In this document: one piece after another, positions 10,053 through 52,266 of the stretch
How positions within the stretch are numbered: the stretch's first letter is position 1
Layout: each line of letters begins with the position of its first letter
Translations under genes and position numbers: made by a program
NCBI GenBank assembly: GCA_030704615.1
Contig: CM060732.1
Location: 28,954,001 to 29,018,000 of the forward strand
Source of the DNA: Takakia lepidozioides
Taxonomy: Eukaryota > Plantae > Bryophyta
Reading direction: 5' to 3'
Length of the DNA stretch: 64,000 bases
The notes under the pieces: model-generated
What the model was told of the DNA's origin: nothing
Databases searched by the model: none
What the model saw: only the letters and a program-made list of their open reading frames with translations

Positions 10053-11697
10053 TCGAAGCTTGAGGTTGCGAACGTTCTCTCCGGCAAAGACAACGACGAG
10101 GTTCCTCTTTGGCGCGTTCCGAATCCATCATTCAACGCCAGTGGAATCTCAACCGCTCGAGCCATCATTCGAGAAGGTAATGATCTTTTGTCTAGCCGTT
10201 TGGATCGAATCGCCCGCAATGCACGACCTTGTCTGCCGAGACACTTGAGACTTGCTCTCAAAAGATTGAGGTCGGATCCGGACCTTGTCATCAGGCCGGC
10301 CGACAAAAATCTTGGTCTTGTGCTTATGGACAAGTCTTGGTACATGCAAGAGGCGATGCGGCAACTCTCAGACACCGAAGTTTATCGTCCGTGGATTCCG
10401 TACCGTGGGAAGAACTTTGGTCGAGGTTGGAGTGCTAGCTTGCCATCCAATCTACAGGTTTGCGATCTCCACCAAAGAATGGAATTACATCCGCCAACGC
10501 CCTCGGTCGTCCACGGACTTTCGAGCTTGTGCTTTGTACTTCATTCCGAAGGTGCACAAACCCGTGCTTGTGGAAGACCCATTTGTTCCTACAACAACTA
10601 CATCTTCGAGCATGCTTCAACTTGGCTCCATCACCAACTCCTTCCGGTACTTCTCAAGGAACCCACTCATTTGGTGATTGATTCTCTCACGCTTCTTCGA
10701 GAGGTTTCCCAACTCGAGGTCCCCTCGCATGCTCTTCTTTTTACGTTTGACGTGGAATCTCTATATCCCAGCATCATCACCGAGCTCGGCTTGTATGAGC
10801 TCGAATGTGCTATTGGAGGTAATTTCACCAAACACAAAAAAGACCTGATCATGACCCTCGCTGGATTAGTCTTGAAAAACCCATTACCTTGAGTTCAATG
10901 GTAGTTTTTGGCACCAAATTCGCGGGACGGCGATGGGGAGCAACTTTGCAGTTGTTTACGCTTGTTTGTTCCTCTGTCGGTTGGAGATGTACATGGAGTA
11001 CGTTGTGCCATCGGAGCAAGAGCTGCTTTATCTCTTAAGCGCTATATCGACGACGGCTTTGGCATCTGGGTAGGCTCCGAAAAGAGCCTCCGGTCCTGGT
11101 TACGGAACTACGGTTCCATGTTCGATGGCATCAAAATCACGACCGCCATAAGCCCGACGTCCGCCGACATCTTGGATATCACCTTCCTCAAAGGAGACGA
11201 CTTCATCCAACTCGACGGCTCTCTACTAGATGTCATCAAAAGGCCCAGAACAAGTATCAAACTTGCCTTGGTCCTCGTGGCATCCACATCACCAAAAGAA
11301 AGCTTTCGTCATCGGCGAGCTCCAACGGTACGTAATACGAGAAAGCACCATCCAAGGGTTCAACCATTTGCGACTTTTGTTTTACAAACGTCTTCGAGCC
11401 CGAGGTTATCCGGCGGCGTTCATCCGGAGTTGCTTCACCAAGATCTCCTACGACCTCAGATCCGCTCTACTCGACCAACAGACGCAACGCGCAGTTGAGG
11501 GTAAACGGGCCCCCCTTGTTCTTAAGCTCGACTACTCTTCGTACACTCGAGCCTTGAACTTGGGGGCCACCCTAAACCTGACTCCACGAGTTGCTTCAGC
11601 AAGTCCCGGAGCTTCGGTTCTTTCCTCGAGCGATGATTTGTGGAGGAATCCGCGAAAGCTGAGTTCATTCCTAGTTAAATCTAGAATGATAGGATGA
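10053..11697 (+). pseudogene. PLE reverse transcriptase, family A (frameshifted in this assembly)
   Basis: IRPADKNLGLV, YFIPKVHK, GRPICS, FDVESLYPSI, GTAMGSNFA, KRYIDDGFGIW, HP.HQKKAF and RLRARGYP. Stops at LVKSRMIG with no GIY-YIG domain. Confidence 0.88.
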
Positions 11698-11868
11698 TTT
11701 TGTAGTGCAAATCCCTAGCATTATTAATTTTGCCTCTTTGATAGCCCTAGTGTTGATGTTAAAGTCAAAGGGTTCCAACAATTTAATTTGGACCATTGAC
11801 TAATTAATGCAGTCTTGACTTGGAGGCTAAATTAGTGCTTTAGTGGCATTATTATTGCCTTGGGAATT

Positions 11869-11944
11869 ATCCCATATCGTTTGCACATAGTGAGGGTGCT
11901 TTTCTAGTATATAAGGATAGGCTTGGCTCTTAGGACTTCATCTC
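11869..11944 (+). promoter_or_regulatory. Putative family A promoter: USE-like ATCCCATATCG, TATATAAG and start at ATCTC (11940)
   Basis: Motif at 11869-11879, TATA at 11908-11915. The copy at 51211-52094 ends exactly at this ATCTC. Confidence 0.55.
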
Positions 11945-11946
11945 TT

Positions 11947-12003
11947 GGTGTTCCACTGATGAGCTTGAGCAATCAAGCGAAACTTGTTTGGAATAAAAAC
12001 ACC
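11947..12003 (+). ncRNA. Minimal type I hammerhead ribozyme, family A
   Basis: GTTCCA-CTGATGA-GCTTGA(GCAA)TCAAGC-GAAA-CTTGTT-TGGAAT: intact core, stem II with a GNRA loop, very short stem III, GUU cleavage triplet. Confidence 0.88.
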
Positions 12004-12814
12004 TTAACTCTTTTTGTGTCTCCACATTTAGAGAAGTCGAGAGTCTAGTCCTTGCCCGCCCGGGCAACTTGGATCGAAGGGGTGCTCGGCTCCGAGGGGA
12101 ATCCCAACCCTTGGATACTTCCGAGGCTTTTTTTTTCCGAAGCACGGGCGTATAGAGCCTTCCGTTTGACGCCATCTTAGCCACGCTTACAATGGGGAAG
12201 CGGCGTTGGGGGTATATGGTAATCGTGTCGGGCAAGCTAATTTAGCCCCGACTACACGGTTCCCCCTGTCGTACGCCCGATGGTCGGAGAGAAGGGATTT
12301 GGTTGATCCTCCCTCGAGTTCATCTCGAGCGATCAGAGGACTATGGGCATGCGCAAGCCTCTGCCGACCTAACCTTCTCGTCGATGACCTTATGCGGTAA
12401 TCCCTCCATTCTTCCTTAGAGGTACGAACCTCTTTTTGAAGGTGGGGCATATAAGTTTTCCAACTAGGGGTTGAGACTTGACCCTATGTTTGTGAGTGCC
12501 TTGAGCGCATGCTTGCCCATAGTGAGCAAGATTTTTGTCGCTAAACAAGGAGAAGCAAACATAAAAAAGCTTACGGTTGGAACGAAAGTGCCTCATTCTT
12601 CAATTAGAGAACCTTATCTCGTGAGGGCGGGAGTCCTTGCATAAGACATAATAGTCTTATTGCATCCCTTTAGGCACGATAGGCGCACTTTGTATGCATT
12701 TGTCTTGGTTTCCATTGCATTTGTATTTGGGTCCGAACCGGCCCCCCTTAATTTTTACTGTGTCTTTTTCCAGTATTTTTCTACTTTTTGTTACCTTTGC
12801 AAGCCTTTGCTACC

Positions 12815-12840
12815 AACCCTAAACCCTAAACCCTAAACCC
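12815..12840 (+). repeat. (CCCTAAA)n telomeric tract joining the family A 3' end to a broken family B RT
   Basis: AACCCTAAACCCTAAACCCTAAACCC followed by CTTGGGGC, which matches 16768 onward. Confidence 0.95.
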
Positions 12841-13722
12841 CTTGGGGCTTGAGCGCCAAAAAGTCCCTTGTCTGCCTGTCAATCAATCCAAACAAGAGAG
12901 CGGAAGCGAGCAATGCATCCAAACCATATGTGAGATTGTCAAATGGGATCTCTGCCACGGATTCGTAAACTTGTCCATCGTGGAGTTGGCGGTGAGCCTC
13001 ATCCACATACCAGTCCTTCCGCATGATCACCAACCCAAGATTTTTGTCTGCTGGCTTGATGACGATGGACTCATCTCTGCTCAGACAGCGTATCGCAGTC
13101 TTGAGGTGACCTCGAATAGAAGACCTGTAGGCAGAGCGAGCCACCTCCCTTAACCGAGTCTCTACAATGTTGCGACCCTCGATGATAATGCTTTCCAGAG
13201 CAGGAAGTCGCACACACTGATCCCAAGAAGGTTGAGGAACTCTGAAAGGAGGAATGGGTCTATCTCTAGCATCCTGAAGTGATATCGAAGACGTAAAGAT
13301 CGAGCCAAAGAGTCATAAGCATCAAGAATAGAAGAGGGAGAAGGAGGAGTAGGATGAGGAATAAAACTCAAACCTAGGCCTAAAAGCTTCTTTTCAAAAC
13401 AAGAGAGTGGACGATTGGCCATGTTGTGGATGGCCACGTTGGTTAACCTGTTCTCTGCCTGAGAGACTCTCTTGCAAGAAAAAAGATAAAGCTTATAGCC
13501 TTCTACATCCCTCAACGGCCACCAGAAGAGCTTGCGAGCTCTCTTCGGCTTGGATCTGCCCATGTGACCTTCTTCTTGAGCTTCTGTTGTTGGTTTTGCC
13601 CCAACTTTTGTTGTCCAGAACCAGAACGGGTCTGAGAACGTAGGGCGGATTTGCTCGGAGAAGATGAACGCGATGCAGCGAAACGGGTGCGAGCAGTCCC
13701 ATTCCGCTGTTGGCCATTTCCC
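12841..13722 (-). pseudogene. Family B RT, 3'-truncated copy
   Basis: Same sequence as 16768-17650 (IKPADKNLGLV); cut at the telomeric tract. Confidence 0.85.
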
Positions 13723-14707
13723 TGCTGCTTTGAAGAGTTTGCCTTGGAGGAAGTTACCTTGGCATTTGCTGAAGTGCCTCGGCCGGTAGGTTGAGTCTTG
13801 GAGACTCGTCGAGCAGGTGAGCGGCCACGCTGTTGTCGCCTCTTGTGGTTAGGAGAGGAAGAACGCGCTCGTTGATGTTGCTTAGGGCGAGTAGGAGAGA
13901 GAGAAGTTTCTTTCGTGAGTGGGAAAGTTGTTTCTGCACCTCTTTCCTTACTAGCTCGGCAATGGTAGGCTCAGTAGGAAGAACATCAGCATCTGCCATG
14001 GCCTGATCTCTAGCTTGGTTCCTTTCATGTAACGCCTTATCCCTCACTGCAGTACCGAGGTTGTGGTTGGCGCGAAAGCAAGAAATTCCGGCATACCAGG
14101 CTGTAGTGGCTTGAGTGCACACAAAGTCAAGCTCATCAAAGAGCCAAGAAGAATCCTGAATCTGGTCAGTGCAAGAAGATACATCCACATGCAAGTTGAT
14201 CTCCCTGAGTCGAGCAATGAAAACATCAGAGGATTTGCTCAAAACAGCTTCAGCTTCTTGTACCAGATCGGAATGAGCTTGAATAAAAGCTGTTTGCAAA
14301 GCTGAATGGTAAGCAACAGTGGCTGCTAGGACAGTAGCATCCAAAGACGTCTGGACAGAGGCAGAAGAGATGACCAACTTCGGACAAGCAACTCTACAAG
14401 CATGAGGAATTTCACCGGCAGCTTTTTGAGATCTGAGTTTGTCGGAAGTTGCCTTGAGACGTTGAAGTCTCTTGAAATCCTTCTTGTACTGCGCCAGAGA
14501 GTTGTCCAACAACTTGCGAATAGCATCCACAAAGTCTGGAGAATGATCATTCTGGTTGAAAAAGATCCCAACTTGCGGCCTTGGAGTAGGAGATAAATCC
14601 CTTGGAGGCGAATAAGACGGTAGATCTTCTGCAGGAGCACCATCACTATTCATCTCTATCCTAGGACGCTTGGAAGAAGAAGGTTCAGAAGTTGCAGCTA
14701 ACATCAT
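13512..14707 (-). CDS. Family B ORF1, coiled-coil protein with basic S/R/Q-rich tail (left copy; 1-bp indel)
   Basis: ORF 13754-14707. Comparison with the right copy shows reciprocal single-base indels, giving a consensus of about 398 aa. Confidence 0.7.
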
Positions 14708-15249
14708 AACAAATGTTTAGGGTCTACAAAAGAGTGGAAACAAATACATGTAGCAGTGCAACAGAGTTCGAACCGCGAATGCACCGGGTGCATTAGTAGC
14801 AAAGTGCAAACAAGTTTTTAGGGGGCCAGTTATGGACACCTTAGAAAGCTTGTAGAAATATCTAGCCTGTGAATCAAAACTAAAAGAATCGATCCTGAGA
14901 CACAAAACTAGAATAGAACAGAGTGGGAGTGATGTTGCAACGTTCTAAAGTGCAAATGCAAGTATATGCAAGAGGCAAGTATGTGTGATGAAACTAATTC
15001 ACTGTAAGGACAGGAGAATAGTAACCTATCTCTGAGAAAGAGAATAGACACACTAAAGAGCAGTCTTAGAAGGAGATCTAACATGTAACACTCGAAAAGG
15101 AGTTTAAAACATGCACTACAATAGACACAAAGCAAATGAATGCAATGAACTATGCAGAAGATCAAATCTAAAACTCAACAACAACAACAACGCCGCCAAT
15201 GAGACAAAGAGACAAGAACACAAGATGCAGCAAAGCGAATCTCTATAAT

Positions 15250-15291
15250 CCCCAAACTAGTTTCGCTCAGCGCGTGAGCTCATCAGTGGGA
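15250..15291 (-). ncRNA. Minimal type I hammerhead ribozyme, family B
   Basis: TCCCA-CTGATGA-GCTCA(CGCGC)TGAGC-GAAA-CTAGTT-TGGGG on minus; palindromic stem III ACTAGT. Confidence 0.88.
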
Positions 15292-15586
15292 AAGAGAAGG
15301 AAAAGAGATACAATGTGCACCCCTCACCCCGCTTATATACTGCGGAAAGTGAACTTGTCTCGGGGGGGAGAGAAAATACCTAATGGATGGAAAACATCCA
15401 AAATTGTCTTGGCTGGAGAGATCGTCCAACACATGAAAACTTAGATGAAAAACATCCAAAGTTTTCTCGGCAGGGGAGAAATATCCAACGCATGAAAATC
15501 TAGATGAAAAACATCCTAATGTTCTCTCCAAAATGGATAATCATCCAAACTAGAAGCTAACTGCATGTCTCAAATACAACTAGCCT

Positions 15587-17650
15587 CTAGGTTTGTAACA
15601 TAGCACGAACTAGATAGGAACGCAAGTTCCGTGCCCTCTTCCAACATACCATAGGTCTGTCAAAGACGCTAACTGCGGAACTTTCAAAAAGCCCTCATGA
15701 AGTTTAGGGTTTAGGACTCCCTCAAAGCTTAGAGCTTGAGTATAACGCGAATGCTCAAGTTTCAAAACCAAGGGGGCCCGCTTGCCCGTCAACTTACGAG
15801 TGGACTCTGAAGTCAACAGTGTAGCACGTTGTGCATAGTCACAAAGCACAAAACACTCCAAGATAAAAGACTTTGGATAGCCTCGAGCACGCATCGCTCA
15901 TAGAACAGTTGCCTGATCTCAGAAAAACCTGCCCGTGTGCTCTCCCTCAAAGTGTAACGTCGTAATTCGCCAATGATGAATGCTCGTTTTTGGTGTCGTG
16001 GATGACACGAGGTCCATGGCAAATACTGGTATCTGTTGAGTGCCTTTTGATGACATCTCGAAGATAAAATCCCATGGTTGACAAAATCAGCTCCCTTGAA
16101 GAACTTAATATCAAGAATGTCAACCGTAGACTCAGAGATTACCCTTTGAATCCGAATTGTGGGACTAAGAGAGTTGTATCCATCGAGCCAAGCCTCCAAA
16201 CTTGCCCGAGATCCTGCCCAAATTCCAAATCCATCATCGATGTATCTCTTGTAGTATAGAGGCCACATGCCTCCTCCAGCACCAGCCAACTCTCTTTCTA
16301 AGCTGCAAAGAAAGAGACAAGCATAAACAACAGCAAAGTTGCTACCCATTGCCGTGCCTCGGATCTGATGCCAATAGCTGGAGCCAAATTGAAGATAGTT
16401 ATTCTCCAACACCATGCGAGAAAGACTCAGGACGAATCTTTCAAACCGAGGTGACTTGAGCTTGCCGGCAATCATCTCCTTCAATCGTCGAAGCCCGTCC
16501 CAGTAGGAATGCTAGGATACAATGACTCCACATCAAAGGTGAACAAAAGCACGTCACCAGGAAGTTGCCTATCCGACAGATCTTTCAACAAAGATATAGA
16601 ATCTACCAAATGGTTATCTTCCTCGAGCAGAATGGGAAACAGATGGTGATGCAACCACTTGGATGCGTGCTCAAAAACATATCCGTTGTATGAACAAATC
16701 GGCCTCCCAACCACCACGGGCTTGTGCATTTTGGGCACGAGATAAAACATGCAGGGTCGGTAGCCCCCTTGGGGCTTGAGCGCCAAAAAGTCCCTTGTCT
16801 GCCTGTCAATCAATCCAAACAAGAGAGCGGAAGCGAGCAATGCATCCAAACCATATGTGAGATTGTCAAATGGGATCTCTGCCACGGATTCGTAAACTTG
16901 TCCATCGTGGAGTTGGCGGTGAGCCTCATCCACATACCAGTCCTTCCGCATGATCACCAACCCAAGATTTTTGTCTGCTGGCTTGATGACGATGGACTCA
17001 TCTCTGCTCAGACAGCGTATCGCAGTCTTGAGGTGACCTCGAATAGAAGACCTGTAGGCAGAGCGAGCCACCTCCCTTAACCGAGTCTCTACAATGTTGC
17101 GACCCTCGATGATAATGCTTTCCAGAGCAGGAAGTCGCACACACTGATCCCAAGAAGGTTGAGGAACTCTGAAAGGAGGAATGGGTCTATCTCTAGCATC
17201 CCTGAAGTGATATCGAAGACGTAAAGATCGAGCCAAAGAGTCATAAGCATCAAGAATAGAAGAGGGAGAAGGAGGAGTAGGATGAGGAATAAAACTCAAA
17301 CCTAGGCCTAAAAGCTTCTTTTCAAAACAAGAGAGTGGACGATTGGCCATGTTGTGGATGGCCACGTTGGTTAACCTGTTCTCTGCCTGAGAGACTCTCT
17401 TGCAAGAAAAAAGATAAAGCTTATAGCCTTCTACATCCCTCAACGGCCACCAGAAGAGCTTGCGAGCTCTCTTCGGCTTGGATCTGCCCATGTGACCTTC
17501 TTCTTGAGCTTCTGTTGTTGGTTTTGCCCCAACTTTTGTTGTCCAGAACCAGAACGGGTCTGAGAACGTAGGGCGGATTTGCTCGGAGAAGATGAACGCG
17601 ATGCAGCGAAACGGGTGCGAGCAGTCCCATTCCGCTGTTGGCCATTTCCC
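15587..17650 (-). CDS. Family B ORF2: PLE reverse transcriptase without endonuclease (three 1-bp frameshifts, likely sequence errors)
   Basis: IKPADKNLG, YLVPKMHK, FDVESLYPSI, QIRGTAMGSNFAVVYA, YKRYIDDGF, HPRHQKRAF. The intact C-terminus is seen at 19515-19864 (LVRAMLQT-stop). Confidence 0.88.
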
Positions 17651-18635
17651 TGCTGCTTTGAAGAGTTTGCCTTGGAGGAAGTTACCTTGGCATTTGCTGA
17701 AGTGCCTCGGCGGTAGGTTGAGTCTTGGAGACTCGTCGAGCAGGTGAGCGGCCACGCTGTTGTCGCCTCTTGTGGTTAGGAGAGGAAGAACGCGCTCGTT
17801 GATGTTGCTTAGGGCGAGTAGGAGAGAGAGAAGTTTTCTTTCGTGAGTGGGAAAGTTGTTTCTGCACCTCTTTCCTTACTAGCTCGGCAATGGTAGGCTC
17901 AGTAGGAAGAACATCAGCATCTGCCATGGCCTGATCTCTAGCTTGGTTCCTTTCATGTAACGCCTTATCCCTCACTGCAGTACCGAGGTTGTGGTTGGCG
18001 CGAAAGCAAGAAATTCCGGCATACCAGGCTGTAGTGGCTTGAGTGCACACAAAGTCAAGCTCATCAAAGAGCCAAGAAGAATCCTGAATCTGGTCAGTGC
18101 AAGAAGATACATCCACATGCAAGTTGATCTCCCTGAGTCGAGCAATGAAAACATCAGAGGATTTGCTCAAAACAGCTTCAGCTTCTTGTACCAGATCGGA
18201 ATGAGCTTGAATAAAAGCTGTTTGCAAAGCTGAATGGTAAGCAACAGTGGCTGCTAGGACAGTAGCATCCAAAGACGTCTGGACAGAGGCAGAAGAGATG
18301 ACCAACTTCGGACAAGCAACTCTACAAGCATGAGGAATTTCACCGGCAGCTTTTTGAGATCTGAGTTTGTCGGAAGTTGCCTTGAGACGTTGAAGTCTCT
18401 TGAAATCCTTCTTGTACTGCGCCAGAGAGTTGTCCAACAACTTGCGAATAGCATCCACAAAGTCTGGAGAATGATCATTCTGGTTGAAAAAGATCCCAAC
18501 TTGCGGCCTTGGAGTAGGAGATAAATCCCTTGGAGGCGAATAAGACGGTAGATCTTCTGCAGGAGCACCATCACTATTCATCTCTATCCTAGGACGCTTG
18601 GAAGAAGAAGGTTCAGAAGTTGCAGCTAACATCAT
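17440..18635 (-). CDS. Family B ORF1, coiled-coil protein (right copy; 1-bp indel)
   Basis: ORF 17682-18635 has heptad-like segments (DAIRKLLDNSLAQYKKDFKRLQRLK; IAELVRKEVQKQL). Restoring the C present in the left copy extends it to TGA at 17440. Confidence 0.75.
17580..17650 (-). promoter_or_regulatory. Predicted -1 ribosomal frameshift signal (slippery heptamer plus pseudoknot); second copy at 13652-13722
   Basis: G GGA AAT in ORF1 phase, 6-nt spacer, 12-bp stem CAGCGGAATGGG/CCCGTTTCGCTG, and loop TGCTCG complementary to downstream CGAGCA. Confidence 0.72.
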
Positions 18636-19177
18636 AACAAATGTTTAGGGTCTACAAAAGAGTGGAAACAAATACATGTAGCAGTGCAACAGAGTTCGAA
18701 CCGCGAATGCACCGGTGCATTAGTAGCAAAGTGCAAACAAGTTTTTAGGGGGGCCAGTTATGGACACCTTAGAAAGCTTGTAGAAATATCTAGCCTGTGA
18801 ATCAAAACTAAAAGAATCGATCCTGAGACACAAAACTAGAATAGAACAGAGTGGGAGTGATGTTGCAACGTTCTAAAGTGCAAATGCAAGTATATGCAAG
18901 AGGCAAGTATGTGTGATGAAACTAATTCACTGTAAGGACAGGAGAATAGTAACCTATCTCTGAGAAAGAGAATAGACACACTAAAGAGCAGTCTTAGAAG
19001 GAGATCTAACATGTAACACTCGAAAAGGAGTTTAAAACATGCACTACAATAGACACAAAGCAAATGAATGCAATGAACTATGCAGAAGATCAAATCTAAA
19101 ACTCAACAACAACAACAACGCCGCCAATGAGACAAAGAGACAAGAACACAAGATGCAGCAAAGCGAATCTCTATAAT

Positions 19178-20925: not shown

Positions 20926-20937
20926 ATTCCTTTTCTT

Positions 20938-41733: not shown

Positions 41734-41754
41734 GTCCCATGTCTTTCATTTCTT

Positions 41755-42450: not shown

Positions 42451-43325
42451 GACCTACAGCTAGTGTATCATGGGGGTGTTTCCTATTTGTTTCCCTTTCC
42501 GCATTCATCTTAGCTACCTTACCATTGATAATTAAGTATCAGTTTGCTTCATCGATCTATCGGTTCCCTCCACTAATCCATTCAATCCACAGCTTCATTC
42601 AGATCTCTCTACACAGTGTGATTGTATCGTATAAGTATCAGATTATGATTTATCAGGTATCAGGCCGAAGCCATTATGTCTCTAATTTGCTCTACAATAT
42701 CACTCTAGCTTTGCATATGACAAGCATCTACTAATCCTCTTTTCTCCTTCATCGTGCTCTCCGATCTCCGCTCCCGCCTGACTCCGAAGTCCTCCCCGAA
42801 TAATGATCCCCTCATCATTCCCCGTTCTTCCCTTTATCCTCCTATCCGCGGTTCTAACCGTTTCCCTCTCTAACCGTCGTATGTGAACTAACATGTTCCC
42901 TTCACAGGTGTTGTTCCCCACAGTCGTTCCCTGTCCTACTCTTCGTTCCCTATTATCGTGACAGCTGTGTCAAGCGGTGACTGGCTGTGTTTGGCTGTGT
43001 CGGGCTGTGACTGGCTGTGTGGCTGTGTCTGCTGTGACGACTGTGACGGGCTGTGTGGGCTGTGTGGGCTGTGACGACTGTGACGGGCTGTGTGGGCTGT
43101 GACGGCTGTGTGGGCTGTGTGGGCTGTGACGACTGTGACGGGCTGTGTGGGCTGTGACTGGCTGTGTGGGCTGTGTCTGCTGTGACGACTATGTGGGCTA
43201 TGTAACCCCCCTCTACAGTGCGCTGCTGTCACCCCTAAGGTTCTTGTTTGTCTCAGTCTGTGCAAAAATTAAGGGTACCCTACAGATCCCGTATAAGTGT
43301 CTAAGTCCCCTACAGTCCTCTAACA
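42343..43325 (-). repeat. 5' LTR of Gypsy copy 2
   Basis: TG...CA termini; homologous to 3699-4829; abuts a C unit. Confidence 0.85.
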
Positions 43326-46300
43326 GGAGTGAACTGCCTCGTGTGGACAATCTTCCAGTGGATGTCTCGTGAGGAGAAAAACCATCCAACAGACGTCTCG
43401 TACGGAGAGAATAGTCCAAAAAGTCTCGGTGGGAGAAAGTCATCCAGTGGATGAAAACAAGTTCTCGACAAGAGAGAACTAGATCCAAAGAATAAAAATC
43501 ATCCAAATAGTCAATTGCATATCTCTCAAATACAACTAACTCCGTGAGTTTATGACTATGCAACAACCAATTATGCTGAAGTTAGAGCATGTTGTGCAAA
43601 GTCGTAAGGGCTGAAACCACTTCGAAAGGAACGCACAACTCGTAAGAGCTTTGCACACGCAGACCATCGCGCAACCATCGTCTTGCTAAAGCCTGCAGCT
43701 GTGTTGTCCTGAACGTGACCAACCACGATCCCCACCTTCCGACCTCCAAGAAGAAACACGGCTCGGTCTTCGTATTGTTGCCTCATCACATGAATGAGCA
43801 GCTTGGTCAAAAGAATGAAGATCAACATCTGCCTCCATTACGTGAAGGCGATTAAAGATGTGTTGCAGCTAACACTATAAGAAAGTTTAGGGTTCACATA
43901 AAGCATCAAAACAAGTGTAGCAGTACAACGCGGATGCACCGGGTGCAAGATAAACACGATCCGGGCAAACAAGTTTTAGGGGGGCCAGTTATGCACCCCT
44001 GGAAAAATTTCAGATCCTGTGAATCAAACCTGAAAGGAGAGATCCTGAGAGACAGGAAACTAGAATAGAAGTATGCGAGGTGTCCTGAAATGCAACTGCA
44101 AACCTATGCAAGAGGCAAATGTGCGTATGAGAACTATTTCACTGGATGCACAGGAGAATAAGAACCCTATCTCTGTTTTGCAAGAGAATGGACACACTAG
44201 GAACAACTTAGATGCAGATCTCCCATGCACTACTCGAGAGGGAGTTTATGGCATGCCGTATAGACACAGAGCACATAACAATGCAATGATCTAAAGCAGG
44301 GGATACAAACGCATCTAAAACTCGACAACTTCAAAGGGTGAGACCACGAGGCAAGATCATGCAAAGTAGTGAAGCCAAATCTTTATAGACCCCAGACTAG
44401 TTTCGCTCAGCGCGTGAGCTCATCAGTGGGAAAGAAAAGGAATGAGATACAAACCCCACCCCCCGCTTATATACTACTAGGAGTGAACTGCCTCGTGTGG
44501 ACAATCTTCCAGTGGATGTCTCGTGAGGAGAAAAACCATCCAACAGACGTCTCGTACGGAGAGAATAGTCCAAAAAGTCTCGGTGGGAGAAAGTCATCCA
44601 GTGGATGAAAACAAGTTCTCGACAAGAGAGAACTAGATCCAAAGAATAAAAATCATCCAAATAGTCAATTGCATATCTCTCAAATACAACTAACTCCGTG
44701 AGTTTATGACTATGCAACAACCAATTATGCTGAAGTTAGAGCATGTTGTGCAAAGTCGTAAGGGCTGAAACCACTTCGAAAGGAACGCACAACTCGTAAG
44801 AGCTTTGCACACGCAGACCATCGCGCAACCATCGTCTTGCTAAAGCCTGCAGCTGTGTTGTCCTGAACGTGACCAACCACGATCCCCACCTTCCGACCTC
44901 CAAGAAGAAACACGGCTCGGTCTTCGTATTGTTGCCTCATCACATGAATGAGCAGCTTGGTCAAAAGAATGAAGATCAACATCTGCCTCCATTACGTGAA
45001 GGCGATTAAAGATGTGTTGCAGCTAACACTATAAGAAAGTTTAGGGTTCACATAAAGCATCAAAACAAGTGTAGCAGTACAACGCGGATGCACCGGGTGC
45101 AAGATAAACACGATCCGGGCAAACAAGTTTTAGGGGGGCCAGTTATGCACCCCTGGAAAAATTTCAGATCCTGTGAATCAAACCTGAAAGGAGAGATCCT
45201 GAGAGACAGGAAACTAGAATAGAAGTATGCGAGGTGTCCTGAAATGCAACTGCAAACCTATGCAAGAGGCAAATGTGCGTATGAGAACTATTTCACTGGA
45301 TGCACAGGAGAATAAGAACCCTATCTCTGTTTTGCAAGAGAATGGACACACTAGGAACAACTTAGATGCAGATCTCCCATGCACTACTCGAGAGGGAGTT
45401 TATGGCATGCCGTATAGACACAGAGCACATAACAATGCAATGATCTAAAGCAGGGGATACAAACGCATCTAAAACTCGACAACTTCAAAGGGTGAGACCA
45501 CGAGGCAAGATCATGCAAAGTAGTGAAGCCAAATCTTTATAGACCCCAGACTAGTTTCGCTCAGCGCGTGAGCTCATCAGTGGGAAAGAAAAGGAATGAG
45601 ATACAAACCCCACCCCCCGCTTATATACTACTAGGAGTGAACTGCCTCGTGTGGACAATCTTCCAGTGGATGTCTCGTGAGGAGAAAAACCATCCAACAG
45701 ACGTCTCGTACGGAGAGAATAGTCCAAAAAGTCTCGGTGGGAGAAAGTCATCCAGTGGATGAAAACAAGTTCTCGACAAGAGAGAACTAGATCCAAAGAA
45801 TAAAAATCATCCAAATAGTCAATTGCATATCTCTCAAATACAACTAACTCCGTGAGTTTATGACTATGCAACAACCAATTATGCTGAAGTTAGAGCATGT
45901 TGTGCAAAGTCGTAAGGGCTGAAACCACTTCGAAAGGAACGCACAACTCGTAAGAGCTTTGCACACGCAGACCATCGCGCAACCATCGTCTTGCTAAAGC
46001 CTGCAGCTGTGTTGTCCTGAACGTGACCAACCACGATCCCCACCTTCCGACCTCCAAGAAGAAACACGGCTCGGTCTTCGTATTGTTGCCTCATCACATG
46101 AATGAGCAGCTTGGTCAAAAGAATGAAGATCAACATCTGCCTCCATTACGTGAAGGCGATTAAAGATGTGTTGCAGCTAACACTATAAGAAAGTTTAGGG
46201 TTCACATAAAGCATCAAAACAAGTGTAGCAGTACAACGCGGATGCACCGGGTGCAAGATAAACACGATCCGGGCAAACAAGTTTTAGGGGGGCCAGTTAT

Positions 46301-47479
46301 GCACCCCTGGAAAAATTTCAGATCCTGTGAATCAAACCTGAAAGGAGAGATCCTGAGAGACAGGAAACTAGAATAGAAGTATGCGAGGTGTCCTGAAATG
46401 CAACTGCAAACCTATGCAAGAGGCAAATGTGCGTATGAGAACTATTTCACTGGATGCACAGGAGAATAAGAACCCTATCTCTGTTTTGCAAGAGAATGGA
46501 CACACTAGGAACAACTTAGATGCAGATCTCCCATGCACTACTCGAGAGGGAGTTTATGGCATGCCGTATAGACACAGAGCACATAACAATGCAATGATCT
46601 AAAGCAGGGGATACAAACGCATCTAAAACTCGACAACTTCAAAGGGTGAGACCACGAGGCAAGATCATGCAAAGTAGTGAAGCCAAATCTTTATAGACCC
46701 CAGACTAGTTTCGCTCAGCGCGTGAGCTCATCAGTGGGAAAGAAAAGGAATGAGATACAAACCCCACCCCCCGCTTATATACTACTAGGAGTGAACTGCC
46801 TCGTGTGGACAATCTTCCAGTGGATGTCTCGTGAGGAGAAAAACCATCCAACAGACGTCTCGTACGGAGAGAATAGTCCAAAAAGTCTCGGTGGGAGAAA
46901 GTCATCCAGTGGATGAAAACAAGTTCTCGACAAGAGAGAACTAGATCCAAAGAATAAAAATCATCCAAATAGTCAATTGCATATCTCTCAAATACAACTA
47001 ACTCCGTGAGTTTATGACTATGCAACAACCAATTATGCTGAAGTTAGAGCATGTTGTGCAAAGTCGTAAGGGCTGAAACCACTTCGAAAGGAACGCACAA
47101 CTCGTAAGAGCTTTGCACACGCAGACCATCGCGCAACCATCGTCTTGCTAAAGCCTGCAGCTGTGTTGTCCTGAACGTGACCAACCACGATCCTCACCTT
47201 CCGACCTCCAAGAAGAAACACGGCTCGGTCTTCGTATTGTTGCCTCATCACATGAATGAGCAGCTTGGTCAAAAGAATGAAGATCAACATCTGCCTCCAT
47301 TACGTGAAGGCGATTAAAGATGTGTTGCAGCTAACACTATAAGAAAGTTTAGGGTTCACATAAAGCATCAAAACAAGTGTAGCAGTACAACGCGGATGCA
47401 CCGGGTGCAAGATAAACACGATCCGGGCAAACAAGTTTTAGGGGGGCCAGTTATGCACCCCTGGAAAAATTTCAGATCC
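43326..47479 (-). mobile_element. Tandem array 2 of derivative C, inverted (about 3.6 units, period 1154)
   Basis: ORF-track offsets 44073/45227/46381; hammerheads near 44400, 45555 and 46710 on minus. Confidence 0.93.
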
Positions 47480-50400
47480 GAGACTTTTTGGACTATTCTC
47501 TCCGTACGAGACATCTGTTGGATGGTTTTTCTCCTCACGAGACATCCACTGGAAGATTGTCCACATGAGGCAGTTCACTCCTAGTAGTATATAAGCGGGG
47601 GGTGGGGTTTGTATCTCATTCCTTTTCTTTCCCACTGATGAGCTCACGCGCTGAGCGAAACTAGTCTGGGGTCTATAAAGATTTGGCTTCACTACTTTGC
47701 ATGATCTTGCCTCGTGGTCTCACCCTTTGAAGTTGTCGAGTTTTAGATGCGTTTGTATCCCCTGCTTTAGATCATTGCATTGTTATGTGCTCTGTGTCTA
47801 TACGGCATGCCATAAACTCCCTTTCGAGTAGTGCATGTGAGATCTGCATCTAAGTTGTTCCTAGTGTGTCCATTCTCTTGCAAAACAGAGATAGGGTTCT
47901 TATTCTCCTGTGCATCCAGTGAAATAGTTCTCATACGCACATTTGTCTCTTGCATAGGTTTGCAGTTGCATTTCAGGACACCTCGCATACTTCTATTCTA
48001 TGCCATAAACTCCCTTTCGAGTAGTGCATGTGAGATCTGCATCTAAGTTGTTCCTAGTGTGTCCATTCTCTTGCAAAACAGAGATAGGGTTCTTATTCTC
48101 CTGTGCATCCAGTGAAATAATTCTCATACGCACATTTGCCTCTTGCATAGGTTTGCAGTTGCATTTCAGGACACCTCGCATACTTCTATTCTAGTTTCCT
48201 GTCTCTCAGGATCTCTCCTTTCAGGTTTGATTCACAGGATCTGAAATTTTTCCAGGGGTGCATAACTCGCCCCCCTAAAACTCGTTTGCCCGGATCGTGT
48301 TTATCTTGCACCCGGTGCATCCGCGTTGTACTGCTACACTTGTTTTGACGCTTTATGTGAACCCTAAACTTTCTTATAGTGTTAGCTGCAACACATCTTT
48401 AATCGCCTTCACGTAATGGAGGCAGATGTTGATCTTCATTCTTTTGACCAAGCTGCTCATTCATGTGATGAGGCAACAATACGAAGACCGAGCCGTGTTT
48501 CGTCTTGGAGGTCGGAAGGTGGGGATCGTGGTTGGACACGTTCAGGACAACACAGCTGCAGGCTTTAGCAAGACGATGGTTGCGCGATGGTCTGCGTGTG
48601 CAAAGCTCTTACGAGTTGTGCGTTCCTTTCGAAGTGGTTTCAGCCCTTACAACTTTGCACAACATGCTCTAACTTCAGCATAATTGGTTGTTGCATAGTC
48701 ATAAACTCACAGAGTTAGTTGTATTTGAGAGATATGCAATTGACTATTTGGATGATTTTTATTCTTTGGATCTAGTTCTCTCTTGTCGAGAACTTGTTTT
48801 CATCCACTGGATGACTTTCTCCCACCGAGACTTTTTGGACTATTCTCTCCGTACGAGACATCTGTTGGATGGTTTTTCTCCTCACGAGACATCCACTGGA
48901 AGATTGTCCACACGAGGCAGTTCACTCCTAGTAGTATATAAGCGGGGGGTGGGTTTGTATCTCATTCCTTTTCTTTCCCACTGATGAGCTCACGCGCTGA
49001 GCGAAACTAGTCTGGGGTCTATAAAGATTTGGCTTCACTACTTTGCATGATCTTGCCTCGTGGTCTCACCCTTTGAAGTTGTCGAGTTTTAGATGCGTTT
49101 GTATCCCCTGCTTTAGATCATTGCATTGTTATGTGCTCTGTGTCTATACGGCATGCCATAAACTCCCTTTCGAGTAGTGCATGTGAGATCTGCATCTAAG
49201 TTGTTCCTAGTGTGTCCATTCTCTTGCAAAACAGAGATAGGGTTCTTATTCTCCTGTGCATCCAGTGAAATAGTTCTCATACGCACATTTGTCTCTTGCA
49301 TAGGTTTGCAGTTGCATTTCAGGACACCTCGCATACTTCTATTCTATGCCATAAACTCCCTTTCGAGTAGTGCATGTGAGATCTGCATCTAAGTTGTTCC
49401 TAGTGTGTCCATTCTCTTGCAAAACAGAGATAGGGTTCTTATTCTCCTGTGCATCCAGTGAAATAATTCTCATACGCACATTTGCCTCTTGCATAGGTTT
49501 GCAGTTGCATTTCAGGACACCTCGCATACTTCTATTCTAGTTTCCTGTCTCTCAGGATCTCTCCTTTCAGGTTTGATTCACAGGATCTGAAATTTTTCCA
49601 GGGGTGCATAACTCGCCCCCCTAAAACTCGTTTGCCCGGATCGTGTTTATCTTGCACCCGGTGCATCCGCGTTGTACTGCTACACTTGTTTTGACGCTTT
49701 ATGTGAACCCTAAACTTTCTTATAGTGTTAGCTGCAACACATCTTTAATCGCCTTCACGTAATGGAGGCAGATGTTGATCTTCATTCTTTTGACCAAGCT
49801 GCTCATTCATGTGATGAGGCAACAATACGAAGACCGAGCCGTGTTTCGTCTTGGAGGTCGGAAGGTGGGGATCGTGGTTGGACACGTTCAGGACAACACA
49901 GCTGCAGGCTTTAGCAAGACGATGGTTGCGCGATGGTCTGCGTGTGCAAAGCTCTTACGAGTTGTGCGTTCCTTTCGAAGTGGTTTCAGCCCTTACAACT
50001 TTGCACAACATGCTCTAACTTCAGCATAATTGGTTGTTGCATAGTCATAAACTCACAGAGTTAGTTGTATTTGAGAGATATGCAATTGACTATTTGGATG
50101 ATTTTTATTCTTTGGATCTAGTTCTCTCTTGTCGAGAACTTGTTTTCATCCACTGGATGACTTTCTCCCACCGAGACTTTTTGGACTATTCTCTCCGTAC
50201 GAGACATCTGTTGGATGGTTTTTCTCCTCACGAGACATCCACTGGAAGATTGTCCACACGAGGCAGTTCACTCCTAGTAGTATATAAGCGGGGGGTGGGG
50301 TTTGTATCTCATTCCTTTTCTTTCCCACTGATGAGCTCACGCGCTGAGCGAAACTAGTCTGGGGTCTATAAAGATTTGGCTTCACTACTTTGCATGATCT

Positions 50401-51076
50401 TGCCTCGTGGTCTCACCCTTTGAAGTTGTCGAGTTTTAGATGCGTTTGTATCCCCTGCTTTAGATCATTGCATTGTTATGTGCTCTGTGTCTATACGGCA
50501 TGCCATAAACTCCCTTTCGAGTAGTGCATGTGAGATCTGCATCTAAGTTGTTCCTAGTGTGTCCATTCTCTTGCAAAACAGAGATAGGGTTCTTATTCTC
50601 CTGTGCATCCAGTGAAATAGTTCTCATACGCACATTTGTCTCTTGCATAGGTTTGCAGTTGCATTTCAGGACACCTCGCATACTTCTATTCTATGCCATA
50701 AACTCCCTTTCGAGTAGTGCATGTGAGATCTGCATCTAAGTTGTTCCTAGTGTGTCCATTCTCTTGCAAAACAGAGATAGGGTTCTTATTCTCCTGTGCA
50801 TCCAGTGAAATAATTCTCATACGCACATTTGCCTCTTGCATAGGTTTGCAGTTGCATTTCAGGACACCTCGCATACTTCTATTCTAGTTTCCTGTCTCTC
50901 AGGATCTCTCCTTTCAGGTTTGATTCACAGGATCTGAAATTTTTCCAAGGGTGCATAACTCGCCCCCCTAAAACTCGTTTGCCCGGATCGTGTTTATCTT
51001 GCACCCGGTGCATCCGCGTTGTACTGCTACACTTGTTTTGACGCTTTATGTGAACCCTAAACCCTAAACCCTAAAC
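47478..51076 (+). mobile_element. Tandem array 3 of derivative C (1346-1347-bp units with a 193-bp internal duplication), ending in (CCCTAAA)3
   Basis: Offsets 47767/49113/50460; hammerheads near 47634, 48981 and 50328. Confidence 0.93.
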
Positions 51077-51113
51077 TTGGATGGTGCTTTCTCGTATTAC
51101 GTACCGTTGGAGC

Positions 51114-51216
51114 GTTAGGGTTTAGAGTTAGGGTTTAGGGTTTATGGTTTTTTAGGGTTTTTTAGGGTTTTTTAGGGTTTAGGGTTTAGGGTGTTTTAGG
51201 GTTTAGGGTTTAGGGT
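51114..51216 (+). repeat. Degenerate (TTTAGGG)n tract
   Basis: TTTAGGG mixed with TTTAGAG, TTTATGG, TTTTTTAGGG and TGTTTTAGGG. Confidence 0.93.
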
Positions 51217-52266
51217 GGTTAGCAAAGGCTTGCAAAGGGAACAAAAAGTAGAAAAATACTGGAAAAAGACACAGTAAAAATTAAGGGGGGCCGGTTCGGA
51301 CCCAATTACAAATGCAATGGAAACCAAGACAAATGCATACAAAGTGCGCCTATCGTGCCTAAAGGGATGCAATAAGACTATTATGTCTTATGCAAGGACT
51401 CCCGCCCTCACGAGATAAGGTTCTCTAATTGAAGAATGAGGCACTTTCGTTCCAACCGTAAGTTTTTTTATGTTTGCTTCTCCTTGTTTAGCGACAAAAA
51501 TCTTGCTCACTATGGGCAAGCATGCGCTCAAGGCACTCACAAACATAGGGTCAAGTCTCAACCCCTAGTTGGAAAACTTATATGCCCCACCTTCAAAAAG
51601 AGGTTCGTACCTCTAAGGAAGAATGGGAGGGATTACCGCATAAGGTCATCGACGAGAAGGTTAGGTCGGCAGAGGCTTGCGCATGCCCATAGTCCTCTGA
51701 TCGCTCGAGATGAACTCGAGGGAGGATCAACCAAATCCCTTCTCTCCGACCATCGGGCGTACGACAGGGGGAACCGTGTAGTCGGGGCTAAATTAGCTTG
51801 CCCGACACGATTACCATATACCCCCAGCCGCCTTCCCCATTGTAAGCGGTGGCTAAGATGGCGTCAAACGGAAGGCTCTATACGCCCGTGCTTTGGAAAG
51901 AAAAAAGGCCTCGGAAGTATCCAAGGGTTGGGATTCCCCTCGGAGCCGAGCACCCCTTCGATCCAAGTTGCCCGGGCGGGCAAGGACTAGACTCTCGACT
52001 TCTCTAAATGTGGAGACACAAAAAGAGTTAAGGTGTTTTATTCCAAACAAGTTTCGCTTGATTGCTCAAGCTCATCAGTGGAACACCAAGAGATTAGGGT
52101 GGTTAGCAAAGGCTTGCAAAGGTAACAAAAAGTAGAAAAATACTGGAAAAAGACACAGTAAAAATTAAGGGGGGCCGGTTCGGACCCAAATACAAATGCA
52201 ATGGAAACCAAGACAAATGCATACAAAGTGCGCCTATCGTGCCTAAAGGGATGCAATAAGACTATT
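51211..52266 (-). mobile_element. Two family A pieces: start-to-telomere copy 51211-52094 (hammerhead 52032-52087) and 3' fragment 52095-52266
   Basis: Reverse complement of 11940-12820 and of about 12650-12820. Confidence 0.92.

What the first reader, a model, noticed from the sequence alone, without database searches (positions are those of the whole stretch)
10053..52266. Telomere-coupled retroelement system: two endonuclease-less Penelope-like RT families, hammerhead pseudo-LTRs and an amplified non-coding partner
Seen: two PLE RTs with no GIY-YIG domain; a shared cassette (TATA, ATCTC, hammerhead, leader, GGCCCCCC, ACCCTAA) in families A, B and C; and most element 3' ends running into (CCCTAAA)n, with the two exceptions joined directly to the next copy. 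Known: endonuclease-deficient PLEs (Athena, Coprina, Terminon types) attach to chromosome ends through reverse-complement telomeric repeats, carry hammerheads, and have RTs related to telomerase. Inference: this is a plant version with autonomous and non-autonomous members that extend or heal chromosome ends. I cannot verify whether these families are already described.
Basis: partly seen in the sequence, partly recalled or inferred. Interest (0 to 1): 0.92.

Follow-up and report, generated by a model that had tools for sequence, protein, structure and literature searches.

The report
Telomere-primed Penelope-like retroelement chain, plant
This stretch of a plant genome is a fossil stack of endonuclease-less Penelope-like retroelements, plus a protein-free ribozyme-bearing derivative, each attached through short telomere repeats; the kind has been known from the spike moss Selaginella since 2007, so this is a well-preserved new example with a few new details.

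Summary
Window 10053-52266 holds two Penelope-like (PLE) reverse-transcriptase families (A and B, 44% identical) with no endonuclease. It also holds a 1152-bp non-coding tandem unit (C) cut down from a B-like element. All three share one cassette: TATATAAG, ATCTC, type I hammerhead, leader, GGCCCCC(C), ACCCTAAA. A covariance model finds exactly 25 hammerheads, all in these elements, and helices I and II covary across eight plant lineages. Every A and C 3' end runs into (CCCTAAA)3-6, or joins directly to a next copy that starts exactly at ATCTC.

This is the telomere-associated EN-minus PLE type already described in Selaginella, so it is a new member or variant, not a new system. The locus is a rearranged fossil, not shown to be a current chromosome end. 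C arrays 1-3 are largely a 5.76-kb DNA-level duplication.

New details:
- Sequencing contigs carry extra bases at every B frame break, so B is probably intact.
- ATCTC marks the RNA 5' end.
- The hammerhead lies 0.5-0.8 kb upstream of the repeats, unlike in Terminons.
- A conserved hairpin plus telomere-like site sits inside the RT coding region.

The scan had already reported the same system on other DNA of this genome.

The parts
10053..12840 (+). Family A element. Its 5' part is lost in the N gap. RT lies at 10053-11697 with several frame breaks. TATATAAG is at 11908-11915, ATCTC at 11940-11944, the hammerhead at 11950-11994 and GGCCCCCC at about 12740. The 3' end ACCCTAAA runs into (CCCTAAA)3.7 at 12815-12840.
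12838..19864 (-). Family B partial tandem (period about 3927 bp; 12838-15934 equals 16765-19864 at 99.8%). ORF1 runs 18635-17682 in the window and extends to about 17442 with the base present in reads. RT runs 17491-15610. Cassettes lie at 19267-18642 and 15339-14714, with hammerheads at 19177-19220 and 15249-15292. The left end is broken in the RT N-terminal region at 12838 and healed by TTTAGGG repeats.
19871..19909 (+). (TTTAGGG)5.6 capping the 5'-truncated end of B (- strand reads (CCCTAAA)5-CTTGTG-AGGGCAGG). It is fused through a TTT microhomology to the middle of a sense C unit.
19906..25104 (+). C array 1. It starts at unit position 728, has 1152-bp units each with one hammerhead and a single internal ACCCTAAAC, and a last unit with a 193-bp duplication. 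It ends in (CCCTAAA)4.4.
25110..30864 (+). C array 2. It starts at unit position 175, preceded by CTTGTG, and ends in (CCCTAAA)4.4. It is the same 5.76-kb higher-order unit as array 1.
30870..35294 (+). C array 3. C units run to 34152 (GTGAACCC), followed by a B cassette at 34153-34729 that starts exactly at ATCTC, then the C cassette at 34730-35280 and (CCCTAAA)3.4.
35300..36389 (+). 5'-truncated family A 3' fragment (equals 11769-12842, 98.4%), preceded by CTTGTGAGG. Hammerhead at 35481-35525. It ends in (CCCTAAA)5.9 laid on a broken Ty3/Gypsy integrase.
36380..43325 (-). Ty3/Gypsy LTR retrotransposon (gag-PR-RT-RNaseH-INT ORF, 40708-36380), truncated in the integrase by a healed break. It is not part of the PLE system but is the substrate on which the chain was built.
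43325..47479 (-). C array in the opposite orientation (3.6 units). It is cut at unit position 559 by the 5' end of the Gypsy element.
47478..51076 (+). C array of 1346-bp variant units (193-bp duplication), joined head-to-head to the previous array at 47478/47479. It ends in (CCCTAAA)3.4.
51115..52266 (-). Degenerate (TTTAGGG)n at 51115-51216. Next comes a family A solo cassette (52094-51216 on the - strand, from ATCTC to ACCCTAAA repeats, hammerhead at 52040-52084). It is joined CCACCCTA|ATCTC to a further partial A cassette at 52266-52095.
15702..15781 (-). Internal coding twin of the cassette's 3' module in the B RT C-terminus. GGGCCCCC (codons R-A-P-L) is followed 60 nt later by TCCTAAACCCTAAAC (V-L-N-P-K-L), and the region is predicted to form a hairpin ending at the telomere-like site. 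A second copy lies at 19631-19710. The family A equivalent is at 11505-11585 (+).

Best explanation
The region is a fossil, later rearranged chain of endonuclease-less Penelope-like retroelements of the telomere-associated type.

Shown by sequence. Each element ends in a cassette that carries a TATA box, an RNA start at ATCTC, a type I hammerhead just downstream of that start, a leader, and a terminal ACCCTAAA that is complementary to the plant telomeric G strand. Family B encodes ORF1 plus an RT without nuclease. Family A is a second, diverged RT family. C and the solo cassettes carry no protein.

Inferred mechanism. The cassette promoter of an upstream copy, or of a tandem unit, drives transcription. 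The ACCCUAAA site of the RNA anneals to a TTTAGGG 3' overhang, either a telomere or a break just healed by telomerase. The RT extends the chromosome end by copying the RNA toward its 5' end. The new end is then recapped with telomere repeats or primes the next element. This gives head-to-tail chains of 5'-truncated copies separated by 3-6 repeats.

C is an internally deleted B-like element. It is copied as multimers, either from tandem transcripts or from hammerhead-cut circles. In this locus it was further amplified by DNA-level duplication and inversion. The locus then became internal, or at least shows no evidence of being a live end.
For: Identity:
- RT motifs match the PLE diagnostics.
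- Homologues carry DUF8422 + HTH_animal, in tandem two-ORF units, in Selaginella, Cryptomeria and Ginkgo.
- The protein atlas places the N-terminal domain with DUF8422 clusters of chordates, arthropods and rotifers.
- No nuclease domain is found.

Ribozyme:
- The core is complete. 92.7% of cells are paired against 74% in shuffles, eight pairs change on both sides, and slid controls give 24-46%.
- There are 25 model hits and all lie in elements.

Priming site:
- All A and C ends run into CCCTAAA repeats, while internal tandem junctions keep a single ACCCTAAAC.
- Relatives show the same contrast: a single ACCCTAAAC about 35 nt before ORF1 inside tandems, and (CCCTAAA)5-7 at contig ends.

Healed breaks. 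B is cut at ..CCCCAAGGGG|TTTAGGG (12838) and the Gypsy integrase at 36380-36389. Each is followed by an A 3' end.

RNA start. Two independent direct junctions begin the next copy exactly at ATCTC, 25-32 nt after TATATAAG.

B probably intact. In two DNA runs (X1, X3) all the read depth carries one extra base at 16498, 15893, 15661 and 17711, exactly where the frames break.

C derived from B. It has 75% cassette identity, a remnant of the ORF1 start and a collinear RT 3' remnant.

Literature for the class: PMC8557442, PMC6431247, PMC4209133.
Against: - No RNA evidence of known kind. The only candidate RNA runs are guesses, kept as contigs, and cover part of B and C at 95-99% identity.
- No enzymology.
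- The locus is not shown to be terminal.
- Orientations are mixed, and two joints (19906 and 47478) are DNA-level fusions, not additions.
- Arrays 1-3 are one higher-order duplication, so there are only about six to eight independent telomere-primed events.
- The hammerhead is retained uncleaved in copies that start at ATCTC, so its role is open.
- Placement within named PLE clades and relative to TERT was not tested. A profile search of solved structures gives only generic RT hits, with TERT at E = 0.03.
Confidence: 0.78

Rival explanations
1. The C arrays and their telomere tracts are an ordinary satellite. It was seeded once from a PLE terminal repeat and then amplified purely at the DNA level, by unequal crossing-over, segmental duplication or breakage-fusion, without ongoing telomere-primed reverse transcription or any ribozyme or circle stage.
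For: Arrays 1-3 share a 5758-5760-bp period, the same start (unit position 175 preceded by CTTGTG), the same 4.4-repeat tract and the same 193-bp duplication in the last unit. Units are 98-100% identical. An inverted joint lies at 47478/47479 and a microhomology fusion at 19906. A preprint on animal retrozymes proposes local tandem amplification after seeding from a PLE end (10.64898/2026.07.22.740005).
Against: At least three structurally different C ends (25083 type, 35280, 51062) all stop at the same ACCCTAAA and expand into repeats there. Array 3 holds a B cassette that starts at the RNA 5' end and is joined to a C 3' end, which is an RNA-level junction. The hammerhead and cassette landmarks are kept intact in all 19 units.
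Confidence: 0.15
2. A and B are not of the Athena/Coprina grade. [quoted passage not shown]
For: The DKG motif is DKN here. Chlamys has DK without a conserved third residue, and PLE-X families keep canonical hammerheads and lack EN (PMC8557442).
Against: No CxC motif lies upstream of the GxKF/Y motif in B or in the 30-sequence consensus. There is no N-terminal GIY-YIG or CxCX1-8C extension. PLE-X of spike mosses target 28S rDNA, not telomere repeats. The Selaginella relative fetched here is flanked by CCCTAAA tracts.
Confidence: 0.07

Closest known systems
Telomere-associated EN-deficient PLEs of Selaginella moellendorffii (Gladyshev and Arkhipova 2007; hammerheads in Cervera and De la Pena 2014, PMC4209133)
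   Same: Both are plant elements with an RT-only protein of about 600 aa (P0012 is 45-61% identical to B pieces). Both have CCCTAAA tracts at and near the 3' end and a type I hammerhead with a short palindromic helix III. Both carry the same GGCCCCC ... ACCCTAAACCCTAAAC module in the RT C-terminal coding region.
   Different: The host is different. No protein above about 50-60% identity is found in the databases, and the Gypsy element's best named hits are liverworts at 49-53%. Here two RT families sit together with a highly amplified non-coding derivative. I could not read the 2007 paper, so I cannot say how much of the cassette anatomy it already describes.
Athena elements / Terminons of bdelloid rotifers
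   Same: Both lack an endonuclease, form head-to-tail chains of 5'-truncated copies separated by short telomeric repeats, have reverse-complement telomeric repeats at the 3' end, carry hammerheads, and have a coiled-coil-type ORF1 upstream of the RT that can be in another frame (PMC6431247, PMC8557442).
   Different: In Terminons the repeats lie immediately downstream of the 3'-terminal hammerhead fold. Here the hammerhead is 0.52-0.83 kb upstream of the repeats, next to the RNA start. These elements are small (about 3.9 kb) and carry no accessory genes.
Non-LTR retrozymes (tandem type I hammerhead repeats of animals; PMC7229834, PMC7761336; preprint 10.64898/2026.07.22.740005)
   Same: Family C is a protein-free tandem unit with one type I hammerhead per unit, derived from the terminal part of a PLE, and found as multimers.
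   Different: C is in a plant, where the retrozymes described so far are LTR-type with type III hammerheads. Its unit is 1152 bp against 150-300 bp. It derives from an EN-minus PLE and has a defined telomere-complementary 3' end. Circular RNA was not tested. The predicted circular fold is only modestly stable (z = -2.35).
HeT-A / TART telomeric retrotransposons of Drosophila
   Same: Both form chains at chromosome ends and have a promoter in the 3' part of an element that can drive the downstream neighbour.
   Different: HeT-A and TART are non-LTR elements. They prime through poly(A) rather than telomere complementarity, work without telomerase and have no ribozyme. This comparison rests on general knowledge and was not tested here.

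Membership tests
Penelope-like elements (RT) | PLE-specific N-terminal motifs (GxKF/Y, DKG) plus RT motifs 1-7 and thumb, as listed in PMC8557442 | tested here: met
   B has GLGLSFIP, ADKNLG (DKN variant), PKMHKP, GRPICS, FDVESLYPSI, GTAMGS and YIDDG. These are invariant in 30 relatives. Precomputed Pfam gives DUF8422 + HTH_animal. Atlas neighbours are DUF8422 clusters of animals.
Penelope-like elements (RT) | RT groups with PLEs as sister to TERT in a phylogeny | tested here: inconclusive
   No named PLE or TERT reference sequences were obtainable. The profile search against PDB gives generic RT hits, with TERT at E about 0.03.
Penelope-like elements (structure) | Hammerhead ribozyme in the terminal repeat; partial tandems (pLTR); frequent 5' truncation | tested here: met
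EN-minus telomere-associated PLEs (Athena/Coprina grade) | No GIY-YIG endonuclease at either end of the protein | tested here: met
   Pfam finds none in any A or B ORF. In the nearest 150 clusters the RT match ends at the C-terminus in nearly all, and the N-terminal extensions have no nuclease domain.
EN-minus telomere-associated PLEs (Athena/Coprina grade) | Reverse-complement telomeric repeats at the 3' end; 5'-truncated ends capped by telomeric repeats | tested here: met
   3' ends at 12815, 25083, 30843, 35280, 36347, 51062 and 51216. Capped 5' ends at 19864, 25110, 30870 and 35300.
EN-minus telomere-associated PLEs (Athena/Coprina grade) | Location at present-day chromosome ends | not testable with these tools
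   Only one window is readable. Scan notes place more sequence on both sides. Tracts are short and lie in both orientations.
EN-minus telomere-associated PLEs (Athena/Coprina grade) | RT falls in the Athena or Coprina clade | not tested
Terminon/Athena 3' end | [quoted passage not shown] | tested here: not met
   From the hammerhead to ACCCTAAA is about 820 nt in A, about 525 nt in B and about 500 nt in C.
Naiad/Chlamys (including PLE-X) | CxC motif upstream of GxKF/Y; N-terminal GIY-YIG or CxCX1-8C extension | tested here: not met
Non-LTR retrozymes | Tandem non-coding units, each with a type I hammerhead | tested here: met
   19 C units each carry one hammerhead. There is no ORF of 200 aa or more in the arrays.
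Non-LTR retrozymes | Self-cleaved, circular RNA monomers in vivo | not testable with these tools
   Only contigs of runs of uncertain kind were available.

The most novel reading that the evidence does not exclude
The RT gene of this plant PLE lineage carries, about 45 codons before its stop, a conserved GC-rich RNA hairpin that ends in a single-stranded CCUAAACCCUAAAC. The proposal is that this works like a telomerase-RNA template with a boundary helix. Reverse transcription that pauses there, or cDNA ends that switch onto it, acquire a TTTAGGG seed, so a 5'-truncated copy is born already cappable and still carries the promoter-ribozyme cassette. This would explain three things: why C arrays begin at that site, why the same CTTGTG-AGG joint precedes A, B and C pieces, and how non-coding partners such as C arise. 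It would also be a concrete intermediate between a retroelement RNA and a dedicated telomerase template.
Probability: 0.2. Interest if true: 0.8.

Novelty: new variant of a known kind. Interest (0 to 1): 0.55.

Why it matters
EN-minus PLEs are regarded as the closest retroelement relatives of telomerase, yet they have been studied almost only in rotifers and fungi, and no in vitro system exists. This plant offers a compact set for testing telomere-primed reverse transcription and the still unknown role of PLE hammerheads:

- a probably intact two-ORF element
- a second RT family
- a very abundant non-coding passenger
- a mapped RNA start
- clear healed-break junctions

The conserved hairpin plus telomere-like site inside the RT gene, if functional, bears on how a template RNA could have become dedicated to telomere synthesis. 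The basic phenomenon, however, is already published for a plant.

Tried and rejected
- **Rfam.** Gathering thresholds gave no hit. The permissive scan gave only weak hammerhead hits, so I built my own model.
- **Local Pfam copy.** It lacks DUF8422 and HTH_animal, so A and B pieces gave no family. I relied on precomputed annotations of homologues.
- **Profile against solved structures.** It returned only generic RT similarity and cannot place the family next to TERT.
- **Exhaustive representative search.** It returned only EN-less relatives among the best 150, so no EN+ or TERT sequences were obtained for a rooted tree.
- **Identifying the organism.** A search with the Gypsy polyprotein gave at best 57% identity to unnamed proteins and 49-53% to liverworts. 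Run names are coded.
- **Expression.** The two possible RNA runs are guesses kept as contigs. One covers 15266-16818 and a C unit at 95-99% identity, the other nothing. This is no proof either way.
- **Homology between the cassette's 3' module and the coding module.** Local alignment recovers only the two anchor motifs. The cassette modules show no significant fold (z about 0), so 'duplicate of the coding module' remains a suggestion.
- **ORF1.** Similarity to relatives' ORF1 is one 28-aa stretch (E = 6e-4). Coiled-coil character was not tested.
- **Splice-junction reading of CTTGTGAG|G.** I considered it, but no donor with GT is present in the window, so it is left open.
- **Repaired or consensus ORFs.** I built none. 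Frames were only compared by arithmetic and by pieces.
Full report
**What is in the window.** A self-comparison, the telomere-repeat searches and a unit map of family C give the following order on the + strand:

- An N gap up to 10052.
- Family A (10053-12815), ending in (CCCTAAA)3.7.
- Family B in the opposite orientation as a partial tandem (12838-19864; 12838-15934 equals 16765-19864 at 99.8%).
- (TTTAGGG)5.6 at 19871-19909.
- Three arrays of the 1152-bp unit C (19906-25083, 25110-30843, 30870-35280), each ending in (CCCTAAA)3.4-4.4.
- A 1.07-kb 3' fragment of A (35300-36373), ending in (CCCTAAA)5.9.
- A Ty3/Gypsy element truncated in its integrase (36380-43325, - strand; Pfam).
- A C array in antisense (43325-47479), joined head-to-head to a sense array of a 1346-bp variant (47478-51062), which ends in (CCCTAAA)3.4.
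- 38 unassigned bases, then degenerate (TTTAGGG)n (51115-51216).
- An antisense solo cassette of A (52094-51216), joined directly to another partial A cassette (52266-52095).

**The proteins.**

- B and A carry the motifs that the PLE literature uses as diagnostics (GxKF/Y, DKG as DKN here, and RT1-7: PKMHKP, GRPICS, FDVESLYPSI, GTAMGS, YIDDG) (definitions in PMC8557442).
- The N-terminal half of the B RT finds 252 relatives. The best is only 50% identical. Named relatives come from Cryptomeria japonica, Selaginella moellendorffii, Ginkgo and Closterium. They are RT-only proteins of about 600-626 aa with precomputed Pfam DUF8422 + HTH_animal, sometimes RVT_1.
- The protein atlas puts the same region with DUF8422 clusters of chordates, arthropods and rotifers, taxa that are rich in PLEs.
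- A and B are 44% identical, and each is about as close to other plants' elements as to the other. They are two old families.
- No GIY-YIG domain is found in any ORF.
- An exhaustive profile search finds 78,621 clusters at E of 1e-3 or better. In nearly all of the best 150 the RT match ends at the protein's C-terminus. Nine long members with N-terminal extensions show no nuclease domain.
- A profile against solved structures gives only generic RT hits, with TERT at E about 0.03. The relation to telomerase was therefore not tested here.

**B is probably intact.** Contigs of two DNA runs of the same organism were laid on 15200-19100. In both runs all of the depth carries one extra base behind 15361, 15661, 15893, 16498, 17711 and 18713. 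Several of these sites are homopolymers.

- By frame arithmetic, the bases at 16498, 15893 and 15661 rejoin the three RT pieces.
- The base at 17711 extends ORF1 by 89 codons to a stop near 17442. That overlaps the RT start codon (17491) in the -1 frame.
- B is therefore a two-ORF element (ORF1 of about 400 aa, RT of about 627 aa), like its relatives, which have ORF1 of 427-535 aa followed by RT of 606-623 aa in tandem units.
- The same contigs close a 1174-nt C unit on itself and join 19100 to 15200, which confirms both tandems.

**The cassette.** In A, B and C the order is the same:

1. TATATAAG
2. ATCTC, 25-32 nt later
3. hammerhead
4. leader
5. AAC(C/T)GGCCCCC(C)
6. ACCCTAAA, 75-105 nt further on

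In tandem B the ACCCTAAAC lies 14 nt before the ORF1 start codon, so the cassette is both the 3' end of one unit and the promoter and leader of the next. Both 'direct' junctions begin the downstream copy exactly at ATCTC: GTGAACCC|ATCTC for a C end joined to a B cassette (34152/34153), and CCACCCTA|ATCTC for A to A (52095/52094). A cDNA that ends at the same base in two families, at TATA-box distance, marks the RNA 5' end. It also shows that these templates still carried the hammerhead uncleaved.

**The hammerhead.**

- Rfam's curated thresholds find nothing.
- The full core (CUGAUGA ... GAAA ... GUH) is nevertheless present in A, B and C, in the Selaginella and Cryptomeria loci, and in three contigs from sequencing runs.
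- On an eight-lineage alignment, 92.7% of cells pair against 74% in shuffles. Eight of 12 pairs change on both sides (3 of 500 shuffles reach this). Slid controls give 24-46%.
- A covariance model finds exactly 25 sites in the window (3 A, 3 B, 19 C; E about 1e-13) and none elsewhere. It also finds weak recurrent hits at the equivalent place in a more distant relative.
- Helix III is only two base pairs with a two-base loop. It is palindromic (CUAG, CCGG, CAUG) except in A. This is the type thought to act as a dimer (PMC4209133, PMC7761336).
- Unlike in Terminons, where the repeats lie immediately downstream of the ribozyme (PMC6431247), here it lies 0.5-0.8 kb upstream of them, next to the RNA start.

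**Junctions and what they imply.**

- Inside tandems there is a single ACCCTAAAC. At array and element ends the same site expands to 3-6 repeats.
- Relatives show the same contrast: a single copy before ORF1 inside tandems, and (CCCTAAA)5-7 at contig ends.
- Two breaks in unrelated DNA were healed at G-rich microhomology. B is cut at ...CCCCAAGGGG|TTTAGGG (12838) and the Gypsy integrase at 36380-36389. Each is followed by the 3' end of an A element.
- This is what priming by a telomeric 3' overhang on the ACCCUAAA site predicts, and it matches the published description of EN-minus PLEs (PMC8557442, PMC6431247).
- The locus is not a simple chain, however. Arrays 1-3 share a 5.76-kb period, the same start and the same last-unit duplication, so they are essentially one event copied as DNA.
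- Position 19906 is a TTT-microhomology fusion of a G-strand tract to the middle of a C unit. Position 47478/47479 is a fold-back joint.
- Scan notes place more sequence at least 54 kb before and 2.4 Mb beyond the window.

I therefore read the locus as a fossil of repeated end additions that was later rearranged. It does not demonstrate present telomere maintenance.

**Family C.** The unit consists of about 170 nt homologous to the start of ORF1, a degenerate remnant collinear with the end of the RT gene and its 3' UTR (alignment score 64 against a maximum of 53 in 1000 shuffles), and the cassette (75% identical to B).

- Array 3 contains a B cassette between C sequences, so B and C RNAs were copied together.
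- C fits the definition of a non-LTR retrozyme: tandem, non-coding, one type I hammerhead per unit.
- It differs by being in a plant, being 1152 bp long, deriving from an EN-minus PLE and having a telomere-complementary end.
- The predicted circular fold of a monomer is only modestly more stable than shuffles (z = -2.35). Circles were not testable.

**An internal twin of the 3' module.** About 45 codons before the RT stop codon, B reads GGGCCCCC (R-A-P-L) and, exactly 60 nt later, TCCTAAACCCTAAAC (V-L-N-P-K-L). A reads AACGGGCCCCCCTT ... ACCCTAAACC.

- The same two motifs, with the same spacing and the same codons (Leu always CTA, Asn AAC, the upstream Pro always CCC), occur in Selaginella, Cryptomeria and four contigs from other runs, at 42-60% protein identity.
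- Among aligned identical residues, the share of identical codons is 0.58 in this 30-column window against 0.39 in the rest of the gene. That is the highest of 215 sliding windows.
- The stretch folds into a hairpin whose base meets the telomere-like site: A -30.9 kcal/mol (z = -5.6); L007 -29.9 (z = -3.6); B -23.3 (z = -1.8).
- On eight sequences, 87.5% of cells pair. Only 1 of 500 shuffles reaches this, and slid controls give 28-69%. The structure was derived from these same sequences, so this is suggestive only.
- C arrays 2 and 3 begin with (CCCTAAA)4-CTTGTGAGGACAAC... This aligns in position with B's CCTAAACCCTAAA-CTTCATGAGGGC..., so they appear truncated at this internal site.

**An unexplained joint.** The same CTTGTG followed by AGG also precedes an A 3' UTR fragment (35295) and B at its RAGFSE codons (19864), where it is not the native upstream sequence. 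Three different partners share one 6-nt filler and an AGG overlap, which points to a site-specific event. Possibilities are a template switch onto the flank of the internal module or a defined RNA end, but I could not decide which.

**Comparison and novelty.** Telomere-associated EN-minus PLEs in a plant were reported for Selaginella in 2007, and their hammerheads in 2014. A 2025 review still cites that as the plant example (PMC12477314). The core finding is therefore a new member of a known kind, in a host that is not Selaginella moellendorffii. The following were not found in the papers I could read, but the 2007 and 2017 primary papers are not held in the library:

- the telomere-primed, PLE-derived, type I hammerhead tandem passenger in a plant
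- the mapped RNA start
- the distance between ribozyme and repeats
- the conserved coding hairpin and telomere-like module

The scan has already reported the same system at other loci of this genome, including a followed-up one (s1-476134). Those notes were used as leads only.

Noticed in passing
window 15702-15781 and 19631-19710 (-), 11505-11585 (+); L001:7543-7644, L002:3491-3592, L006:2098-2199, L007:3413-3514, L008:2040-2141, L010:3360-3461: The RT C-terminal coding region holds GGCCCCC and, exactly 60 nt later, a telomere-like CCTAAACCCTAAAC (codons LNPK). Codon choice is conserved across eight plant lineages. The stretch folds as a hairpin that ends at the telomere-like site. Synonymous conservation is the highest of 215 windows in the gene.
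   Followed up: partly
window 19864-19874 (-), 25101-25111, 30861-30871, 35291-35301 (+): The same joint, (CCCTAAA)n-CTTGTG-AGG, precedes three different sequences: the C RT remnant, an A 3' UTR fragment and the B RT at its RAGFSE codons. AAACTTGTGAG occurs nowhere else in the window. The origin of the six bases is unexplained.
   Followed up: partly
window 15361, 15661, 15893, 16498, 17711, 18713: Contigs of two DNA runs carry one extra base at each of these places, in all of their depth. The window assembly, or this particular copy, has single-base losses that break the B reading frames. Frame-based readings elsewhere in this assembly deserve the same caution.
   Followed up: yes
window 17442-17491 (-): With the base present in reads at 17711, ORF1 of B ends at about 17442 and overlaps the RT start codon (17491) by about 50 nt, with the RT in the -1 frame. 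No classical slippery heptamer is seen in the overlap.
   Followed up: partly
window 1-4829, 36380-43325, 60389-61781: Three copies or fragments of one Ty3/Gypsy family are present (95-98% and 92% identical). A GGCTGTGTG-type minisatellite lies in the terminal region (4310-4707 and 42964-43203).
   Followed up: no
window 47478-47479 and 19906: There is a fold-back joint between antisense and sense C arrays (unit position 1021 against 455). A G-strand telomere tract is fused to the middle of a C unit through TTT. Both look like DNA-level break repair, not retrotransposition.
   Followed up: partly
window 51077-51216: 38 unassigned bases are followed by a degenerate G-strand tract with T-rich variants (TTTTTTAGGG, TTTATGG, TTAGAG). 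It lies between a C 3' end and an A 3' end that face each other.
   Followed up: no
L007:214-255: In one relative the loop of hammerhead helix II itself reads CCCUAAA.
   Followed up: no
window about 9550-10052: An assembly gap (run of N) directly precedes family A, so the 5' part of that copy is not available.
   Followed up: no
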